This document shows, one piece after another, positions 21,354-38,700 of a DNA stretch of 64,000 bases. Where the stretch lies: assembly GCA_963924565.1 (NCBI GenBank), contig OZ004609.1, positions 34,224,001-34,288,000 on the forward strand, in the 5' to 3' direction. The DNA comes from Ascidiella aspersa (lineage: Eukaryota). Below the pieces are notes generated by a model that saw only the letters and a list, made by a program, of their open reading frames with translations, was not told the origin of the DNA and searched no databases. The translations under genes and the position numbers were made by a program. Position 1 is the first letter of the stretch; every line of letters starts with the position of its first letter.

Positions 21354-24300
21354 TCAAACTGTCATTAACCATTCAGCCCCCACGTCCGTCAAGCAACGGG
21401 CCTCGACAACGACTTGCATCTGCGCCGCGCGCGACAGCTGAAATGTGACTGTGACGTCATAATCATCACCTCCTGTCGCGCGCCAGGTGGTGCCCCCCGA
21501 CTGGATGTTCACGTGATGTTCGTAAACCCACGTGGGGGCCGTATCTTGTCACGTGTGCACACGTTATTTCCGGGCATTGTTACGTAGAGTTTAAGGACAA
21601 AAGTAAGTTTTTGAACAATAACAAAACAGTTTTTATGCCAAGTGCAGAACACGTGAGGCCCGGGGACATTCTTTTGCGATGCGCGAGCTTTATCAGAACT
21701 AAATGATTGTTGTGTGAATGGTTGATCAGGTAAAATTAATTTACACGAGCATAACGAATGTTTTTTTTCTATTTACAATAATATATGCGCTAGACCTGGT
21801 GTAGTGTTTTAGGTCGAGACTTTACAGTTCTTGAAGTGATCTAGCTTATTCGGTATTTATCTAATGTTGTGTGAATGCAACAAGTAATTTTAAATTGGAC
21901 AACTACGACCTATTGTACCGTACAAATAATTATACGTACAATAATAATAAATGTGCTTGACTTCACGATTGTTTTTTTTTGGTAAATTTCTGAAAGTATT
22001 TTCTATATTAAAGCCCATACAGAAGTAGGTATCACTTTGAACGTTTCGAATAACTCTTTATTCATTTGATGTTGAAAATCCTACCTACTTTTGTATGGGC
22101 TTTGATATTCTTATTACGTCTTACTACAACCTCCAACCATTATGCTCCAAAATTTTCTATATTGTTTTGACAATATAAACCCACACGTTGACAAGTATTC
22201 GTGAGGTGCCCTTAGGGTTTAAATTAGTTCGACCAAAATAGTTTAAATTAGTTCGACCAAATACGGCTATTTGTCATGTAGACATGATTAAAAAGAAACT
22301 CATAAAAAAGGAAATAATTACGAATTTGGCTTGGCGTTAACTAAAGGGTAGAGTTCCGTCTCAGTTTTCAAGAATTTCATATTAACTAATTCATAAACTC
22401 CAATTTTATTCTAATGCTAAAAGGGTTTGCGTGTAAGGTGATTATCAACGTTTAACGAAAATATCCAAACAGAACCACAATGGTTATAAAAAAATTAGAA
22501 TACCATTAAGATGTTAAGCAGATGATGCAATTTGCGTAACTTAGGATTCTGCTTTTTTGAATACAGTTGTTTCAGATCTATCTTTATAACCTTTGTGGTT
22601 CTGTTTGGAGCTTATGATAATGATAAAACATCAACAACTAGAAGTGTTGGAACAGGCTTAGATCCCAATACAAACAATAAAAATAATATTAATAATATTA
22701 TTTTATCAACATTTAACGCAAATATTAGCAAACTGTTTATAAACCGATATCTACGCAAGCTGTAAGTTTAACTTGATTATTAAATTCAAATCAGTTTGGT
22801 TACCTTTCTCCTTTTGCTCATGCAGAACGTACAGATCGGGTCGCCATTTTGTTCGTCATGCACCGTCAAGCACGGGTGCTCTTCGAAAACGTCAGAGCTG
22901 AGCGTTTGGTCTGCGTAATACGTATTGATTGCGTCACTCTCAAGTCTCAACTAAGGATTTGCGATAATCCAATTTTGAATTTAACGCTTGATATTTACTT
23001 TGGGAAAAATCAGACCGCCCAATACGACACGAATTAGGTCATTACTAAGAACATACAAAAACACGGTAAACTTTAGACTTAAAAAGGTTGAAACGGTAGC
23101 CAGGTTATTTAGCCACAATTATAAACGACATTACTATAATTAAAAAAATTATAAAAATACATTACACTAAAAACAAAAACCATAAAGAACAATTATAATA
23201 GGGAGTGGCTTTTTGCCTGGCTCGCTCGGGTACACATACACCAATTAGTGATTATATGTCGATTTGAAATACTTTGCTGTCCGAGTTAATAGCGCCTTCC
23301 AAAATATACTGTGAATGGGGTTGAATGAACATGCTTTAAACTAAATATAATTTTAAAAAATGTTCAAGAACGAGCTACCCTTTACTGACCCCGCATTTAA
23401 ACCCTGGACTCGAGTCAGTTAATATTTGTGTCCACACTTACCGAGGTGTTGTATGTAGCTGACCGCAAGTCGTAACGTCTCGACTTTACTCAAACGACGG
23501 TCGATCGGTTCGGTTGGGATTAATCTTCTCAGATTCTGGTCAAGAAACACGATTTGTGAAAAAGCGAAAAATTAAGGCCCCGAGTGTAAGCGCCGTTTTG
23601 TACCTTTTTAGTACACTTGTTTGGTCACAGGACTTTTCAAGACGTTTTGCAACGACAAAAAGAAGCCTTAGAAAATAATTCAAACTAAAAGCAAACTAAA
23701 AAAAATTGGAAATAACAAAAATAAAAATACTACAAAACAATTAAAGCTTTTGGGTTTTTATTATTGGAATAAGCGGATTATTAAAAACTAGAAACTTAAT
23801 CAAACTCAGATGTTTAGAATTACGTTAAGTCAAATTTGCAGTTAGTTTAAATTAATTCGGAATTCATTTTTACATGCTAAACCGAGAATTGCAAGGATTT
23901 ATGATAATTTTGTTGTGCTTTCCTTCCTCTAACTCATTTCACTCTAACTAGTCTTCTAATTACCTAAAAACGTAGGTCCGGGTGTGATTTTGCTCTGCAA
24001 CTGGTAAACTTTGATAAATAATTAAAACCGTAATTTACAAACGTTAGAGGTAGACCAAACAAACTCGGACTCTCAATTATTGCTTGAACGCTTTAAAACC
24101 TTTTTGTGAACAGGGCGAATTAATGCTGGGCAGTGGGCAAGGCTGTTCCTTGAGGAGAAGGGATTGTATACATGGCCGCTGCAAACTGCATTGTTTGCCT
24201 AGTATAACTACGTAAATGCAAAAAAATAAATCGTTTTCGAGCCGTGCATCTCATCGCACCCTCAAATATTAAAGTTCAGCCAACTAGAACCCTAAAGGGC

Positions 24301-24911
24301 ATTTTTTATTTTTTTGTTTTTTTAATATAAAAAATAATCACATTTTTGGGGAAATTGTATGACGTAGCTTTATGACGTCAATCCTGATTTTTTATGACCC
24401 CCAAAAATAGATCCTGGATCCGCTTCTGTCAGTAAAGACGCTTACATATTGTCGATTGCAGTTTTAGTACAGAAAAGAAACACAGTCGTACCTGAAAAGC
24501 TAGATTCACGTTCGGTGACCTTCTGCTGTCCGCAGCGCTCCGCTTTTTCGGCGCCTTTTCGGCAATTTCGAGTCCGTGTCCGTTCGCGGTCCGGTCCCTG
24601 TCCGCAAAACAGGTTGCACTCCCCACGGGTCCGCCACGGTCCGCGACAACCGCTCCGCGGCCCGTTTCCGCAAAGTTGCGCTTCGGGCTGTTCTGCTGAT
24701 GACGGTAGCAGGTCAGATAGGAAGCGGTGGTGTCGTCCACCGGGGTCGCTTCAGGGAATTTCCCCGGGAAAATAGAAAAAAGCGGGGGCAGGCGGGTCCC
24801 CATTCCGCAGTCACTGGGCGTGGGTGCCATCCAAACGGGGAAGTCCCGGTTTTCCAGTGGGGCTTGTTCAGTGGCGACGGCGGCGACCGGGTAAGGTTCT
24901 TCGAAATTCAT
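21354..24911 (-). CDS. Tcf15: Paraxis/Scleraxis-family bHLH transcription factor (Tcf15/Scx ortholog), 4 exons, ~234 aa
   Basis: Exons 24911-24492, 23535-23442, 22910-22804, 21437-21354, phase-consistent. HLH VNLAFQ|[31 protein letters not shown] and the family-diagnostic C-terminal [11 protein letters not shown]|LS (cf. ICTFCLSNQRK). The start codon and last exon are less certain. Confidence 0.9.
21410..21660. promoter_or_regulatory. E-box cluster at the Paraxis last intron/exon boundary
   Basis: CATCTG 21417, CAGCTG 21435, CAGGTG 21484, CACGTG 21510/21529/21550/21650, TGACGTCA 21452. Confidence 0.45.
22804..22910 (-). CDS. Tcf15: Paraxis exon 3 (ICTFC motif)
   Basis: [36 protein letters not shown], phase 1 in / phase 0 out. 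Confidence 0.9.
23442..23535 (-). CDS. Tcf15: Paraxis exon 2 (helix-loop-helix)
   Basis: ttgaccag acceptor, [37 protein letters not shown] donor. Confidence 0.95.
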
Positions 24912-25579: not shown

Positions 25580-26256
25580 CAGGGGTCGGGAACCTATGGC
25601 TCGCGAGCCATATATGCCTCTTTTTGTGACGCCATAAGGCTTCTTTCATGAAAGATTATTGCTTGCTGATAAACCTAAGCTATCCCTTGTCAGCATGATC
25701 TAAATAAAACTACAAGCGGCTACGACCGCCTTCCTAACTTTATTTCTTCTTTTTATTACAGAAACTAGCAATTTTTTTTTGAATCTCTTTATATCCAAAA
25801 GGCCCCGTTCTTTCAACGGAACTCCGTAAGGGTAACACTAATTTACGGAATGATGAATGGTCGGAATGGTCGGAACGCTCACATTATTATTATTAAATAT
25901 AATAACACTTGACCCACCTTCACCCAAACGCTAACCCCCACCCTAACTCAAATATTGTGCTTTGGTTTAATAATTGTTTTAACAGGGTAACACTTCAATT
26001 AGTGAGCGTTCCGACCATTCCGACCATTCATTATTCCGTAAATTAGTATTACCCCTCCGTAATCAAAATTGTGCAAACTTGGCTCGTTCATTTTTGCTGT
26101 CCTTTAATTGAGAAAGAAAATAAACGGCCCTGCTCAATTTACCTTATTTCAACCAATAACTAGATGTTAAAAAAGTATTATACGGCTTTCACGAAAACAC
26201 AACCACGAATATTTGACTTTTATGGCTTCCTTAGCTATAAAGGTTCCCGACCCCTG
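25580..26256. mobile_element. hAT-type MITE hosting a nested element
   Basis: TIRs CAGGGGTCGGGAACCT / AGGTTCCCGACCCCTG; TSD AGTTATAG/AGTTACAG (7/8). Confidence 0.85.
25830..26054. mobile_element. Merlin-like MITE nested in the hAT MITE
   Basis: ~53-bp near-perfect TIRs starting GGGTAACACTAATTTACGGAAT; perfect 8-bp TSD CTCCGTAA. Confidence 0.8.
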
Positions 26257-26359
26257 AGTTACAGCATCATCCACTTCACTTAAACGCTTCTACTTTCTGC
26301 TCTAAAGCCTTGCGGTGGCTTATATTTAACTTATGAACCTCGCTTTCTGCAAGGCCAAA

Positions 26360-26620
26360 ACAACACAGTAGTAATAGCAGCAGATGCAGCAGTAATACCA
26401 GCAACAGCAATAGTAGCAGCATAGCATCATATCCTCTACACCTAAACGCTTCTACTTTCTGCACTGCTTGCGGTAGCTTATATTTAACTTACTTAAGCGT
26501 GCTTTCTGGGAGGCCAAAGCAGCAACAGTAGTGATAACAGCAGATGCAGTAGTAATAGCAGTAACAGCAGCATCAGTGGCAGCAACAACAGCAGTAGTAG
26601 CAGCATTAGTAGCAGCAGTC
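26360..26620 (+). repeat. (CAG/TAG/CAA)n low-complexity tract within a degenerate tandem duplication (25380-26620)
   Basis: AGCAGCAGTAGTAGCAGC runs; repeated CTTATATTTAACTTA..CGC.TTTCT units. Confidence 0.7.
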
Positions 26621-26649
26621 ATCACAACCTACGATTGCTCGACAACAAC

Positions 26650-26730
26650 ACGCTGCACAGCTGTGACGTGACAGACCACGTGATCCAGCTGTCTTGCGCG
26701 CAAAAATAAACCTGAGGTGCTCGCGTCAAT
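26650..26730. promoter_or_regulatory. Candidate Paraxis upstream enhancer/promoter (E-box triplet)
   Basis: CAGCTG 26658, CACGTG 26677, CAGCTG 26686 and TGACGT within ~35 bp, ~1.7 kb upstream of the Paraxis ATG. Confidence 0.4.
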
Positions 26731-32700: not shown

Positions 32701-35700
32701 TCATATTAAAACAACTTCAGACGGCCTAAAGCCACAGAAGAACCAGGCAATACCGAGCTGTCAAATAATATTGGCGCGCAGAAAATTAATTAAAAAGCGA
32801 GCGGCGGCGCGGTCTTACAGCCGACACTCACTCACTCCATCACCCATCAATCAAACGCGAAAAAAGCGACGAGCGGGTCAAAAAAACGCACAGCAAAAAC
32901 AAGGGGTTCTGAACGCGTGTGTGTGACGAAAAAAAGAGAGGGGGGGGGGAGTTTTTGGGCGGCCCGCCGATAACAAACGGTTTGCGCGACGGGCCGTTTA
33001 CGATGAGCGATGGTTTCGTAATAAGAACACGGGCTATGAATCAGTCGTTAAGCGGACGCCAATGTTATTGGTTTGATTGATGGGGGGCGATATATTCTGC
33101 TGTGGGTCGTTGACTGGGCGAAGGCTGTTTTTTTGCTGAGTCCATGTTGATGGTGTCGGATGATTATGTTGAGAATGAATAAAGAGATTTTGAAACACAA
33201 TACACGTGTTTTTTAGTAATTTAAATAAAAATAATAAAGCCATAATATTCGATATAATCGACATTTCGCAGTTTACAGACATTTCACTGATGATGGCATG
33301 AGGTATTGCTAAAACGTCTGTAAACTGCGAAATGTCGATTTTATCGAATATTATGGCTTTAATATTTTTTTATTGAATAAAGAGATGTTCGAAACTTTCA
33401 AACTGATACCTACACTACAGTAAAACCCAAAGTTTAAAAACCCGAGGAAAAAACAGAGTAAAGACATTTTTTAAAGAAATATATGTTTCGCCTTCACTGG
33501 CATCGTGTTTTTGACGTTTTGATTAATTTGATTATTACTTTGCTACGTATTTGTATTTTTCTTTACCAATAGAAACTGACGATGCCAGTATCGGTGAAAT
33601 ATCTACTCCTTTAAAAAAAACGACTGATCCTGGTTTTACTCAGGGTTCTAAAACTTGAATTTTATTGTTAATACACGCGTCAGCGGAACAGTGATCGACA
33701 AGCAGAAATCTCCTTAGAATGGTTTTAGAATCCATAAAGATACTGCCTTTTATATACCTACTTCTGTATAGGCTGCAGTATTCTTACTATGCCTAACTAC
33801 AACCCCCAGCCATTAGCTTATTTATTCGAAACGTTCACAAAATGCTAACTACTTCTATTTTTGGGCTTTGGTATTCATTCTACGTCAAAGAACAACCTCC
33901 AGCCATTATGCCCTAAAATAAATTCGTTTACAAGAAAACAGCGCTTATGTGTTGTGAAACTTGTGAAACGGTTTGTGCAGCGGCGCATAGGTCAACGACC
34001 TGACGGCGTGTTACGCGGAGCTTATTTCTCGACACTTGATTCGATTTCTTATTGATGGGTTTAATTTCCCGTGTTAAGTGTTGAGTGCGCTTTATAATAA
34101 TCGGCAGCACAGGCAATCGGAAACAAGGAGCAAAATGACTAATTGCTTTTGTCCCTTGTATTTTTTTTAGGCGCTGGTTCTTTTGAGACGTTCTGTTAGA
34201 CTTAGAGCAGGGGTTCTTAAACTTTTTTCACCGCGGACCCCTAAAACATTTTTTTGCTTCGCATGGACCAGTGTAGGCAAGGAATTTTAAAGATGACGTC
34301 ATAAATTGATGTCACAATACAAATAAACTTCAGAAAACTGCCGCTTCGGCTAAAAAAATGTGAAACCGCAATGGAGTCTAGAAAAACATTAAGGGCAAAA
34401 AAGTTTCCCCGAAGGGGTCTATGGACCCCAGTTTAAGAACCCCTAACTTAGAGGTAAAAGAAAAGCCGCGAAATTCCGACGAAAATTTAATTTTGGTCGC
34501 TCAAGTGATAGAAAAACTAAAAGTTATTTTTGGCAGCCTAAGTGATAGACACACAGTTGAGAAATAAAAAAACTGGGGCTTATTTTACAAGTCAATGTTT
34601 CAAGAGAAGATTTAATTGTTATTAAGCAGGCATTAGGACTGCTTTTTCGTTCTAACCATGTGGACTACGCTGCAAAAAAATCCAATTATGTTAACTATAC
34701 GGCAATAACTGTAACCATGTCAACTACGACGACCAAGCCAAATTAAATTTAAATGAAAAATCCAAATCAAATTAAATAAAATCAAACAATTTTAGGTTTT
34801 AACCCACTGACGTAATCCATATAAACATTCACCGCTCTTTGCCGCATTTGTGAGTAAACTGTGGAATATGTAATCACCTTGACAACGTTGCTTGGCAACT
34901 TGACCAGTCTGGCCATCGCGTCAACTTCTACGTCACCGATCGATGGGCTCTTGAGGTTGTGTGACGTAATAAAAACCGCGTGGTGACGTTGCAAGAGGAG
35001 CTCCTGACGTTTGCTAATCGCATCTGTTCAAATAACTGGTTAAAATAGCAAATCATGAAGTAAAACAGCGTGACAATCTTCGTATAGTTTAGACATTTTA
35101 CTGTTTTTTTTAATGCGTAGGTTTTTCCGTATGCTGCGATATTAACAGTTAATTCGAAAATAAAAACTGTTCCTGTGTACACTATGCATGGATATGTAAT
35201 ATAGCTTTATAATGAACAAAAAGGTCGAGTAGATCGACAGCATCTTGATTAAGACGTTTCGATACGAACTTGCATCATCTTCAGTTAATGTTATTATACA
35301 AGTTCGTATCGAAGCGTTTTAATCAAGATGATGTCGATCTACTCAACCTTTATGGCTTTAAGATTAATTATATCAAAAAGTTTTCCATTATTAAAATACA
35401 AGTATTGTTTATATGCAGTATTTTAAAAAGCACAGGCTCAGTAAAAATTGAAAAATCCCTATAAAAAGTACAACTTCGTCCTAAATGAATCTTTTGGAAA
35501 AGAGAACAACCAAAATTATTTTCTGTTAACATGACATGAATGTGGGTTCTACTTATAATTACACTTTGAGGTGCAAAAATGAGAAATGACATCACCGACC
35601 TTTCCAGCTTTCGTCATTCGCCACGTCATTACATTCATTTGATGACGTCACTTGCTTGGCGCCGTCCTTGCGCGACGCGTCGGCGACATCGGCGTCGCCA

Positions 35701-38700
35701 CTAGCGGGCAGCGCGAAACGCGATGAGGACACAAAAGCAGCGAGTGACGTCACGGGGGAGCACGAGGCGTTTGATGACGTCACGGGCGAGGCGGAGAAAA
35801 TCGGTGACGTCACAAAAGCGGCGCTCGGGATGCTTTTGGCGGGTTGGAGGCTGGTGATTGGTTTGGAGGTGATCCGGCTGTCCACCAAGTCCTGCATCCG
35901 CTGAATCGGATTCGAGGAGGAGGAGCTTTTTGGAAGATCGCGAGGAATGATGAGATCGTGGAGGATTGAGGAAGAGCGCAACTTCTTTGGTTCGGCTCTT
36001 TCCTCCTGGGATGCCTCTATCAGGGAGCGCTTTCTGCCAGGATGGATGTGATGATGATGATTGTGATCTTTACGTGTCTCCGGAGCAGCGCTCTCTACGA
36101 TCTTGAGCATCTCCTGGAGAGGATTGGTCGAGAGTTTGTCCTTGATGAGAGGTTGGTAGATCGTGGTGGATGGAGGAGAGTACTGCTTCTTCCTGAATGC
36201 CGAAAAGAGCGAATTCATGTTCTCCTTCAAGCACTCGAGGGGGTCGCGCTGCGGAAGACTTCCGGAGTAAGCGGAAATCTCCGGATGTCGAGGATCCCGC
36301 TTCACAGTGAGGTCCAGGGGGCTTTCGGCTTGTCGATGATGACCTTTTAACAGCTCTTTTGATTCCTTGCGCGAAACTTGCGCCGCGGTTGTCGGAGAGT
36401 TTATCGAAGAGCTGAAAGGGGTGAAGGGCTTCGCGTTGGCCGTTGTTCCGGATCTGGGAGCCTCCACCTTGCTTATCGCGCTTTGAATCGTGCTCTCGAG
36501 GGATTTGATGAAATCGAAGCCCGAAGCGGGATTTTGTTCCTTTGCTTTGTTGGCTCCGGGCTCCGGGCGAATCAAGGAAGATTCGGCGCGCTTTTGGGAA
36601 GAGGAAGTCGAGGACTCGTTGCTGGATGTTGGCGACGCAGAAGAGCTGGAAACGTTGAGGTGCCTCCGATGATGTCCGCTCAGCTCCTGGAGAGAGCGGA
36701 AGGACTCGGGACACTCGGAGCACTTGAATCCAGGATGTTGGTTTGACGCAGGAGGAAGACAAAAGGAGCTTGGAACGAACCCTGGAGGAAAAGGAGCAGG
36801 ATACCCGGAGGAGGATGTTGCTCCTGCTCCGAGGAGCGAAGGGAAGAGAGAGGGAGAGAGCCAGGGAGCGGAGTAGAGGAGTGATGCGGCATAGGCGGCT
36901 GGGTTGGCCATGGCTGGAAAATTAAACCGGCATTTAGAACTGAGTGATAACTGAAGAGAAACCAACGGATAAACGCAGGACATGACTTAAGTCGTTTGGG
37001 CAATATGACCAGACTTAACTCAAGTATTTTAGGCAATATGACTAGACTTGACTTAAGACTTTAGGCGGTATGACTCGACCTGAGTCTTTTGGGAAATATG
37101 ACTTGTCTGGAGTCTTATGGGCAACATGACTAAATTTCTTAAGTCACGGTTTTCAAATGACTTGACCTAGCAAAAAATAAAAACGAACTTAGCAAACAAA
37201 AAAATGCAAAAGAGAAAAAAGTGGCAATGTAAAGCGCTTGGTGACAAAATAACATTTTTTTCTCAATGTACACAATTAAGTTTGGGCAATTGCATTACAA
37301 ATTGTTTCAACACTTGAATTATCGAATCGGCAGTTTCCCATCATTGTTTACTAATGATTGGAGGTTTTAGTAAAGTTGTAGTAACGTAATAAGAATATTA
37401 AAGCCCATACAGAAGTAGGTATCATTTTGAACGTTTCGAATAACTCTTTATTCATTTTCAACATCTTTCAAAATGATACCTACTTCTGTACGGGCTTTAA
37501 TATTCTTATTACGGTGCATTTGTATTGTTTACTAAGATCTACAGTCTACACACATAGTCTAGCAGGAAGCGGTAGTCCACAACACAGTAGTGAGGCATCT
37601 TAGGTAAACAAAGGAAATCCACCTTCCGTAGGTTGTCTAACAACACTAGTAGCGCCGGAATCGCTTTGTTTACGTAACAATGCGACAACAATACCGGTTC
37701 GTGCCTCACGCGGTCTCATCTATTTTTGTCGTGATTACAAAATCGACGAATTGCGTAATGAAATGTTGGTTTGTGCTTATGCAAATTAAATTAATGATGA
37801 TGTAAATGAAAATATCAAAAAATATCCATTTCTGGTTGAACAACCATATTCACGTACTAATTTTTCGCCTACGTTGATATTTAGGTAACACAATCAGGAA
37901 TAGCCAAGCTATGGTTAGTGTGTATAAAATGGATTCATATTTTACAATAATAAATTGCACCACTATTGTCATTCACATAATTAGGTGTACCAGTCGTTAA
38001 AATAATTATTAAAGTCCACCTTTTTACGACTTTAATTTATGCTTTACACTCACAGGGTTGCCACAAAACGCCATGAAAAAATTCAAAGTCATTCATGGAT
38101 TTTTTAAAGAGTGTTTTTTTAAGATCTAAACTTGGATCGCTCGACGATTTTTCAATTTAATTCTTAAACAAAACAAAACAAAACAATATATATATTATAT
38201 ACCATAGTAAACAAAATAACTTTTTTTTCTAATTGTATTTTTGTAACGACACTTCCTAAACACGTAACTTAAAGTGGCTATAAAAAATTTCAAAGGTTAT
38301 TCAAAAACTTCTGGTTTTTAATACGTGAATTAAATTCAAAGACTAATATTAAAAGGCTTTTTAATACGTATATCAAAATACATTTAAAGATTTCGACAAC
38401 TCTTTTTTAAAGACTCTTACCTCCCAGCAAAGGATAGTAGAATGGCGACTGCGTGAGAACAGAGGAGAAATCTACCAATGGGGAGGTCACTTCCGGCTTC
38501 CGGGTCGTCTGCTGACCGACTACCGGCACCTGATTGGTCGGTCGCTTTCTGGCGCCGCTCTCATTGGCTGACGGCGACGAGCCGTTGACCAATCCGAGGT
38601 GGATTCGCCAGGAAGGCACCTTCTCGTAATGCTTGGTCTTGATCATGTGAACGCTCAAGTCCTACATGGAAAGATGGTTTAAGACAGTTGTATTTAACCT

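What the first reader, a model, noticed from the sequence alone, without database searches (positions are those of the whole stretch)
24492..24560. Paraxis/Scleraxis ortholog with a broken DNA-binding basic region: a possible Id-like dominant-negative bHLH
Seen: exon 1 ends [23 protein letters not shown] and splices in frame to an intact HLH ([31 protein letters not shown]) and a conserved ICTFC tail. Known: Paraxis/Scleraxis basic regions read R.AANARERDRT.SVN, where the Asn and the invariant Glu of E-R-x-R contact the CANNTG E-box. Here [13 protein letters not shown] shows N>D, an apparent 3-residue deletion removing ERD, and a helix-breaking Pro. Inference: the protein could still dimerise with E-proteins but not bind E-boxes, i.e. 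a somite/tendon regulator converted into an Id-like sequestering factor in an animal that (if a tunicate) lost somites. The intact HLH and ICTFC argue against a pseudogene.
Basis: partly seen in the sequence, partly recalled or inferred. Interest (0 to 1): 0.82.

Follow-up and report, generated by a model that had tools for sequence, protein, structure and literature searches.

The report
Tunicate Paraxis-like gene lacking E-box glutamate
This is the single-copy tunicate Tcf15-r (Paraxis-like) muscle-lineage gene, intact and well conserved except that its DNA-reading basic region has lost the glutamate that all 165 other well-modelled family members examined keep; the supposed 3-residue deletion is an alignment artefact, and the proline is shared with relatives that keep the glutamate.

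Summary
They belong to a three-exon, 212-codon gene on the minus strand.

**What it is.** It is the only Paraxis/Scleraxis-type gene in this 308.6-Mb genome. It is the counterpart of Ciona Tcf15-r (Paraxis-like), with further counterparts in Clavelina and Styela.

**What is corrected.**
- The gene aligns to those three proteins without gaps from a Lys/Arg cluster to the start of helix 1, so there is no 3-residue deletion.
- The proline (position 14) is shared with Ciona and Clavelina, which still have the E-box glutamate. It is not a lesion of this species.

**What stands.** This species alone has Asp for Glu9, Ser for Arg/Lys10, Ala for Arg/Lys8 and Ser for Asn6. Glu9 is present in 165 of 165 properly modelled family members retrieved. 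The HLH stays 29-30/35 identical to the other tunicates, and the N- and C-terminal motifs are kept, so a pseudogene is unlikely.

**Most likely mechanism.** Canonical CA half-site reading is lost or weakened, and the protein acts through dimerisation. An Id-like sequestering role is possible but untested. Five Lys/Arg remain in the region, and bHLH-PAS proteins show that factors without Glu9 can still bind DNA.

**Limits.** No RNA, read or dN/dS check was possible.

The parts
24492..24911 (-). Exon 1 coding part (ATG at 24911; 140 codons; ends in phase 0 at donor CAG|GTACGA)
   Evidence: Collinear with the N-terminal parts of the Clavelina, Ciona and Styela orthologues.
24759..24791 (-). Conserved N-terminal motif LPPL..x..F..K (residues 41-51)
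   Evidence: Invariant columns L41 P42 P43 L44 F48 K51 across the four tunicate sequences. This ties exon 1 to the same gene.
24504..24554 (-). Degenerate basic region, 17 residues (Atchley positions 1-17). Asp9 codon 24530-24528, Ser10 codon 24527-24525, Arg12 codon 24521-24519, Pro14 codon 24515-24513
   Evidence: No Pfam match to profile positions 1-22.
24492..24503 (-). Start of helix 1 (LAFQ), last four codons of exon 1
23536..24491 (-). Intron 1 (GT...AG, 956 nt)
   Evidence: It holds no alternative exon with a Glu-Arg/Lys-x-Arg/Lys motif.
23442..23535 (-). Exon 2: rest of helix 1, loop and helix 2 (31 codons plus 1 nt; donor CTCG|GTAAGT)
   Evidence: Pfam HLH E 9.2e-12; 80-93% identical to family members
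22911..23441 (-). Intron 2 (GT...AG, acceptor tattacgcag|AC)
   Evidence: The acceptor was chosen by reading frame and confirmed by alignment of the exon 3 product directly after 'HL' of the orthologues.
22786..22910 (-). Exon 3 coding part: conserved QTL...PC...CTFCM tail; stop at 22788-22786

Best explanation
This is a functional, single-copy orthologue of tunicate Tcf15-r (Paraxis-like), a Twist-superfamily bHLH gene. Dimerisation helices and both flanking motifs are under constraint. The basic region has the normal length but has been substituted at the residues that read and hold an E-box half-site: Glu9 to Asp, Arg/Lys10 to Ser, Arg/Lys8 to Ala, Asn6 to Ser. Arg12 is kept.

Shown: the gene structure, the orthology, the substitutions and how unusual they are in the family.

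Inferred: the protein still pairs with an E-protein or another class A partner through its intact HLH. It can no longer make the canonical Glu-to-CA contact. Its dimers therefore bind E-boxes weakly or rely on the partner's half-site. The gene would then act as a modulator of muscle-lineage bHLH activity, anywhere from a partner-dependent co-factor to an Id-like sink, rather than as a symmetric E-box reader.
For: - Gene model.
- Copy number: single copy; the nearest paralogues in the genome are Hand (63%) and Hand-r (57%).
- Orthologues: Clavelina, Ciona (Q4H2Z7 / NP_001071797) and Styela. A profile of these three next hits TCF15 of vertebrates and invertebrates at about 1e-29.
- Ungapped alignment of the basic region.
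- Glu9 in 165/165 properly modelled family members; Arg/Lys10 and Arg/Lys12 almost as constant.
- HLH 30/35, 30/35 and 29/35 identical to Clavelina, Ciona and Styela, against 7, 6 and 4 of 17 in the basic region.
- Conserved N-terminal LPPL motif and C-terminal CTFC tail.
- Glu9 makes the strongest base contact, and every bHLH that binds the CA core has it (PMC8431614; SCL:E47 structure PMC3714592).
- Human TWIST1 Glu117 and TWIST2 Glu75 substitutions at this residue are dominant disease alleles (PMC10530651).
Against: - No binding or expression data exist for this species.
- Asp keeps the carboxylate, so residual or altered recognition cannot be excluded.
- The region is still basic: 5 Lys/Arg against 6 in the relatives.
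- The tunicate basic region drifts in general: Clavelina vs Ciona is 8/17, and Clavelina has already lost Asn6. Part of the divergence is therefore a clade-wide trend.
- In Ciona the orthologue behaves as a positive regulator.
Confidence: 0.55

Rival explanations
1. The protein still binds DNA and works as a transcriptional activator, like Ciona Tcf15-r. Either Asp9 partly replaces Glu9, or the changed basic region reads a different half-site while the partner reads the CA half-site, as in bHLH-PAS class I factors paired with ARNT.
For: - The region keeps 5 Lys/Arg, Arg12 and Asn17.
- HIF1A and SIM (Ala9) and AHR (Ile9) bind non-canonical half-sites with a Glu9 partner. HAND1 and Hes proteins tolerate a Pro in the basic region (PMC8431614).
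- Knock-down of the Ciona orthologue lowers nine muscle genes.
- Strong conservation of the rest of the protein suggests an unchanged developmental role.
Against: - Four contact positions changed at once, not only Glu9.
- No family member among 165 tolerates any other residue at position 9.
- Pro14 lies between the basic region and helix 1. (That these normally form one continuous helix on DNA is established bHLH structure knowledge, not tested here.)
Confidence: 0.3
2. The gene is newly non-functional: a young pseudogene whose basic region decayed first.
For: Loss of an otherwise invariant residue. No expression evidence could be obtained.
Against: - The reading frame is intact over 212 codons in three exons, with canonical GT-AG introns.
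- The HLH shows 5/35 differences from Clavelina against 10/17 in the basic region.
- Short N- and C-terminal motifs are retained.
- Neutral decay long enough to change four contact residues should also have hit the HLH.
Confidence: 0.08
3. It is an artefact: a mis-called exon 1 (the real basic region lies on another exon) or an assembly error in these codons.
For: Many database family members do have an intron just before 'SVN', and their models read through it.
Against: - Exon 1 is collinear with three orthologues from the LPPL motif through the Lys/Arg cluster and SPNVN to the junction. One of them is a Ciona protein that also has an NP_ RefSeq accession.
- No other open frame with Glu-Arg/Lys-x-Arg/Lys lies on this strand between 23.5 and 34 kb, apart from an out-of-frame, wrongly spaced match inside exon 1.
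- The difference involves several codons, not one base.
- There is only one copy in the assembly.
Confidence: 0.05

Closest known systems
Ciona Tcf15-r (Paraxis-like; UniProt Q4H2Z7, NP_001071797; gene KH.S781.11 / KY.Chr11.73)
   Same: - Same protein layout: LPPL motif, Lys/Arg cluster, (S/T)PNVN-LAFQ start of helix 1, [16 protein letters not shown] helix 2, and a PC...CTFC tail.
- Same basic-region length and same Pro14.
- HLH 30/35 identical.
   Different: Ciona keeps Asn6, Arg8, Glu9, Lys10 and Lys12; here only position 12 survives. Ciona's muscle-lineage expression and positive effect on muscle genes are not known for this species.
Vertebrate Paraxis (TCF15) and Scleraxis (SCX)
   Same: HLH 24/31 identical over exon 2. 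The LIPTEP.DR.LSK.ETLRLA.SYI.HL signature and the C-terminal CTFC motif are shared. The tunicate profile hits TCF15 first outside tunicates.
   Different: Vertebrate proteins have the canonical AN.RER.RT.SVN basic region and bind E-boxes with E12 (Wilson-Rawls 2004, cited in PMC8802780). Here 2 of 8 consensus positions remain.
Id / Emc (group D HLH proteins)
   Same: Possible mode of action: an HLH that pairs with E-proteins but does not contribute a working DNA-reading half.
   Different: Id proteins lack a basic region altogether (PMC8431614) and form a separate family. This protein keeps a Lys/Arg-rich stretch of normal length, and its HLH is of Twist-superfamily type.
bHLH-PAS class I factors (HIF1A, SIM, AHR) and SCL/TAL1
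   Same: These are natural bHLHs in which the tissue-specific partner lacks Glu9 (Ala9 or Ile9), or does not need its own DNA contact. The dimer is positioned by the other subunit or by cofactors (PMC8431614; PMC3714592).
   Different: They are unrelated subfamilies with PAS domains or LMO2-type cofactors. Their alternative contacts are old and conserved, whereas this change is seen in one species so far.

Membership tests
bHLH superfamily (Pfam PF00010) | Helix 1 - loop - helix 2 match above the curated cut-off | tested here: met
   Exon 2 product: 45 bits against a 20.7-bit cut-off, E 9.2e-12, profile positions 23-52. The same stretch was found in the whole-genome scan (L013).
bHLH superfamily (Pfam PF00010) | Basic region matching profile positions 1-22, including Glu9 and the E-R-x-R pattern | tested here: not met
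   The exon 1 product gives no Pfam hit even at E 10. Position 9 is Asp and position 10 is Ser.
Paraxis/Scleraxis (TCF15/SCX) family | Family-specific HLH signature and closest similarity to TCF15/SCX rather than other Twist-superfamily members | tested here: met
   Best hits to exon 2 are family members at 80-93% identity. Own-genome paralogues Hand and Hand-r reach only 63% and 57%. The tunicate orthologue profile hits TCF15 at about 1e-29.
Paraxis/Scleraxis (TCF15/SCX) family | C-terminal ...PC...CTFC motif after helix 2 | tested here: met
   Exon 3 product aligned to the three tunicate orthologues. The same motif is seen in vertebrate and invertebrate members.
Paraxis/Scleraxis (TCF15/SCX) family | Canonical basic region R2, A5, N6, R8, E9, R10, R12, T13 | tested here: not met
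   Only position 12 (Arg) and position 13 (Ser for Thr) fit. Styela fits 8/8, and Ciona and Clavelina 6/8, counting Lys = Arg and Ser = Thr.
Tunicate Tcf15-r clade | LPPL..F N-terminal motif, Lys/Arg cluster, (S/T)(P/H)NVN start of helix 1, [12 protein letters not shown](V/I)SYI helix 2 | tested here: met
   Alignments A1 and A3.
Tunicate Tcf15-r clade | Muscle-lineage expression from gastrula to tailbud, downstream of Tbx6-r.b/Mrf/Snail | not testable with these tools
   Known for Ciona only. A motif scan of 590 nt upstream found one T-box half-site at -44 and no Snail site, which is uninformative.
Id/Emc (group D) HLH | No basic region before helix 1; Id-type HLH | tested here: not met
   The 17 residues before helix 1 hold 5 Lys/Arg and 1 Asp. 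The HLH groups with TCF15/SCX, not Id.
Id/Emc (group D) HLH | Sequesters E-proteins into dimers that do not bind DNA | not testable with these tools
   Needs EMSA and reporter assays. No complex prediction was run, because the HLH spans two exons and a joined sequence was not to be built.

The most novel reading that the evidence does not exclude
One tunicate lineage has turned its only Paraxis/Tcf15-family gene into an HLH-only modulator. The modulator pairs with the E-protein, or with Mrf/Hand-type partners, in the larval muscle lineage but no longer reads an E-box. This would be a natural, recent class A to 'Id-like' transition, caught with the intermediate states still alive: Styela fully canonical, Ciona and Clavelina with Pro14 and a partly eroded N-terminal half.
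Probability: 0.25. Interest if true: 0.6.

Novelty: new variant of a known kind. Interest (0 to 1): 0.42.

Why it matters
Glu9 is about as invariant as a transcription-factor residue gets. A conserved, single-copy developmental bHLH that has replaced it, together with three neighbouring contact residues, while keeping its dimerisation domain is a natural experiment. It shows how a DNA-binding factor might become a dimerisation-only or altered-specificity factor.

The four tunicate sequences form a graded series of matches to the consensus contact positions: 8/8 in Styela, 6/8 in Ciona and Clavelina, and 2/8 here. This series can be tested directly in the Ciona electroporation system, where the orthologue's targets are already known.

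The caveat is that only one species shows the change, there are no expression or binding data, and the more dramatic features claimed (a deletion, a new helix-breaking proline) do not hold up.

Tried and rejected
- **RNA and reads:** The junction and the codons rest on homology only.
- **Word search with exon 1:** no hit.
- **Word search with the Clavelina C-terminal part:** only four proteins.
- **Profile search:** no tunicate orthologue beyond Clavelina, Ciona and Styela, so the loss cannot be dated more finely.
- **Alternative exon with a canonical basic region:** none within 15-32 kb of the window on either strand with a strict motif. None on the minus strand between 23.5 and 34 kb with a loose motif. 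The one exception is an out-of-frame RERTRT inside exon 1 at about 24585. There is also an in-frame DRDRT beside it. Both lie in a CG-rich, repeat-like stretch, are wrongly spaced from helix 1, have no GT donor after them, and align to non-conserved parts of the orthologues. I rejected them as chance.
- **Compensated frameshift across the basic region:** checked by reading the other two frames by eye. The Glu codons there are 1.7 and 7.3 codons from the Pro codon instead of 4. Rejected.
- **Promoter motif scan:** uninformative.
- **Joined protein:** the spliced protein was never joined for any search. Exons were searched one by one by reference. Identity counts for the HLH were summed over the two exon pieces inside a script.
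- **Complex prediction and structure prediction:** not used. The HLH spans two exons, and a model without DNA would not settle the question.

Full report
**Observation**

They are the end of an open frame that starts with ATG at 24911 and ends at a CAG|GTACGA donor in phase 0.

After a 956-nt intron, a pyrimidine-rich acceptor leads into exon 2 (23535-23442). Exon 2 encodes the rest of helix 1, the loop and helix 2, and ends at a CTCG|GTAAGT donor in phase 1.

The only acceptor that restores the frame of the ICTFC tail is tattacgcag|AC at 22911/22910. The frame then runs to a stop at 22788-22786. The model is 212 codons long.

Pfam HLH matches the exon 2 product (E 9.2e-12, profile positions 23-52). 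Nothing in Pfam matches the exon 1 product, even at E 10. The profile therefore sees no basic region.

**Identity of the gene**

The window is C3:34224001-34288000 of a 308.6-Mb assembly. A whole-genome scan with the HLH profile, and with both exon products, finds this gene once. The nearest paralogues are the Hand (63%) and Hand-r (57%) genes. No canonical Paraxis/Scleraxis copy exists elsewhere in the genome.

An exhaustive HMMER search with the exon 2 product returns Paraxis/Scleraxis/TCF15-type proteins at 80-93% identity. The three closest full-length ones are named:
- Clavelina lepadiformis (CAK8682079.1)
- Ciona intestinalis (Q4H2Z7 / NP_001071797 / BAE06630)
- Styela clava (XP_039265169)

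The Ciona gene of this family is named Tcf15-r (Paraxis-like), KH.S781.11 / KY.Chr11.73, and is the only Tcf15/Paraxis-type entry in the Ciona bHLH table (PMC7693978). I take the Ciona protein above to be its product. This is an inference: no result links the accessions to that gene model.

A profile of the three tunicate proteins next hits TCF15 of vertebrates, arthropods, brachiopods and molluscs at about 1e-29. The genome is therefore a tunicate's, and the gene is its Tcf15-r.

The species is not one of the three above. It cannot be placed from this gene alone, because the HLH is 30/35, 30/35 and 29/35 identical to Clavelina, Ciona and Styela.

**The gene model is supported by homology**

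- Exon 1 shares an invariant LPPL..F..K motif with all three orthologues. It is collinear with them through a Lys/Arg cluster and the S-P-N-V-N start of helix 1.
- The residues on both sides of the exon 1/2 junction are contiguous in the orthologues.
- The exon 3 product aligns directly after 'HL' of helix 2, with the QTL, PC and CTFCM columns conserved.

**The basic region**

In Atchley numbering, Asn17 is the 'VN' that opens helix 1. The 17-mers are:

| Sequence | 17-mer |
|---|---|
| Family consensus | QRQAANARERDRTQSVN |
| Styela | RKRTANDREKNRTHNVN |
| Ciona | ISKKKNGREKGKTPNVN |
| Clavelina | KRKNVAVKEKGRSPNVN |
| This gene | [17 protein letters not shown] |

The alignment with Ciona needs no gap from the Lys/Arg cluster to helix 1.

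Read correctly, the changes are Glu9 to Asp, Arg/Lys10 to Ser, Arg/Lys8 to Ala and Asn6 to Ser. Arg12 and Ser/Thr13 are kept. Pro14 is present in Ciona and Clavelina as well, next to an intact Glu9-Lys10, so it arose earlier and is not specific to this species.

Counting the eight most constant positions (2, 5, 6, 8, 9, 10, 12, 13), Styela keeps 8, Ciona and Clavelina keep 6, and this gene keeps 2.

Among 182 distinct family sequences retrieved, 165 have Glu9. Sixteen of the 17 others have a broken or mis-modelled basic region, mostly intron read-through just before 'SVN', and one (P0004) is a non-family PTF1A-like protein that met the filter. None is a credible exception. The departure is therefore real and, in this sample, unique.

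**Is it a pseudogene or an artefact?**

The frame is open over three exons with canonical splice sites. The HLH differs from Clavelina at 5 of 35 positions, against 10 of 17 in the basic region. Short motifs at both ends of the protein are kept. This pattern fits continued selection on dimerisation rather than decay.

No alternative exon with a Glu-Arg/Lys-x-Arg/Lys motif lies on this strand between 23.5 and 34 kb. The one match is an out-of-frame RERTRT inside exon 1 at about 24585. It sits in a CG-rich, repeat-like stretch, at the wrong distance from helix 1 and with no donor after it. I take it as chance.

Reads and RNA could not be consulted. An assembly error over several codons is unlikely but formally open.

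**Mechanism**

Glu9 makes the strongest base contact, and every bHLH that binds the CA core has it (PMC8431614). In SCL:E47 the two Glu residues make the only base-specific contacts (PMC3714592). Substitutions of this Glu in human TWIST1 and TWIST2 are dominant disease alleles (PMC10530651).

With Asp9 and without the Arg/Lys at positions 8 and 10, canonical half-site reading is most likely lost or much weakened. The intact HLH should still dimerise.

What the dimer then does is not settled:
- **Id-like reading.** An ATOH7 basic-domain deletion inhibits E47 activity (PMC8834682).
- **DNA-binding reading.** The region keeps five Lys/Arg. HIF1A, SIM and AHR lack Glu9 yet bind non-canonical half-sites with a Glu9 partner. 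The Ciona orthologue behaves as a positive regulator of nine muscle genes (bioRxiv 10.1101/2024.08.27.610013).

The suggested link to somite loss is weak, because the other tunicates also lack somites and keep Glu9.

**Verdict**

This is a known gene family and a known tunicate gene, with a species-specific, unusual loss of the E-box-reading residues. I rate interest as moderate.

The spliced protein was never joined for a search. Exons were searched one by one by reference.

Noticed in passing
window 24560-24600 (minus strand, inside exon 1): A CG-rich, repeat-like stretch encodes DRDRT in frame and RERTRT in another frame. Both resemble the canonical basic-region core but lie about 30 codons upstream of helix 1. 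Judged to be chance, though a vestige of an older arrangement cannot be excluded.
   Followed up: partly
window 25825-26059: An inverted repeat with 58-nt arms, 93% complementary, 119 nt apart, lies about 0.9 kb upstream of the gene. It looks like a miniature inverted-repeat transposable element.
   Followed up: partly
window 26276-26670: A trinucleotide-rich stretch gives poly-Leu, poly-Ala/Thr and poly-Cys/Tyr open frames on both strands. Probably a microsatellite-like repeat, not coding.
   Followed up: no
window 24340-24385 (intron 1): Two TGACGT (CRE-like) half-sites lie about 14 nt apart, in a tgacgtagctttatgacgtca arrangement.
   Followed up: no
G000:C2:9756884-9775504 (L023 and neighbours): Five tandem HLH hits with an unusual basic region (Gly-Arg-Glu-Arg-Val-Arg type) and weak Pfam scores. 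The scan's note s1-790921 describes a five-gene atypical bHLH cluster in this genome.
   Followed up: no
Database proteins P0021, P0032, P0038, P0063, P0080, P0109, P0117, P0135 and others: Many short public 'proteins' of the Paraxis family carry junk sequence right up to 'SVN'. This points to a widespread intron just before helix 1 in other animals, and to read-through gene calls. The tunicate genes have their intron four residues after 'VN' instead.
   Followed up: partly
window 35592-36983 (minus strand): A 463-codon open frame with a C2H2 zinc-finger-like segment, about 11 kb upstream of the bHLH gene. The scan's notes on this window refer to a Tshz intron near there.
   Followed up: no
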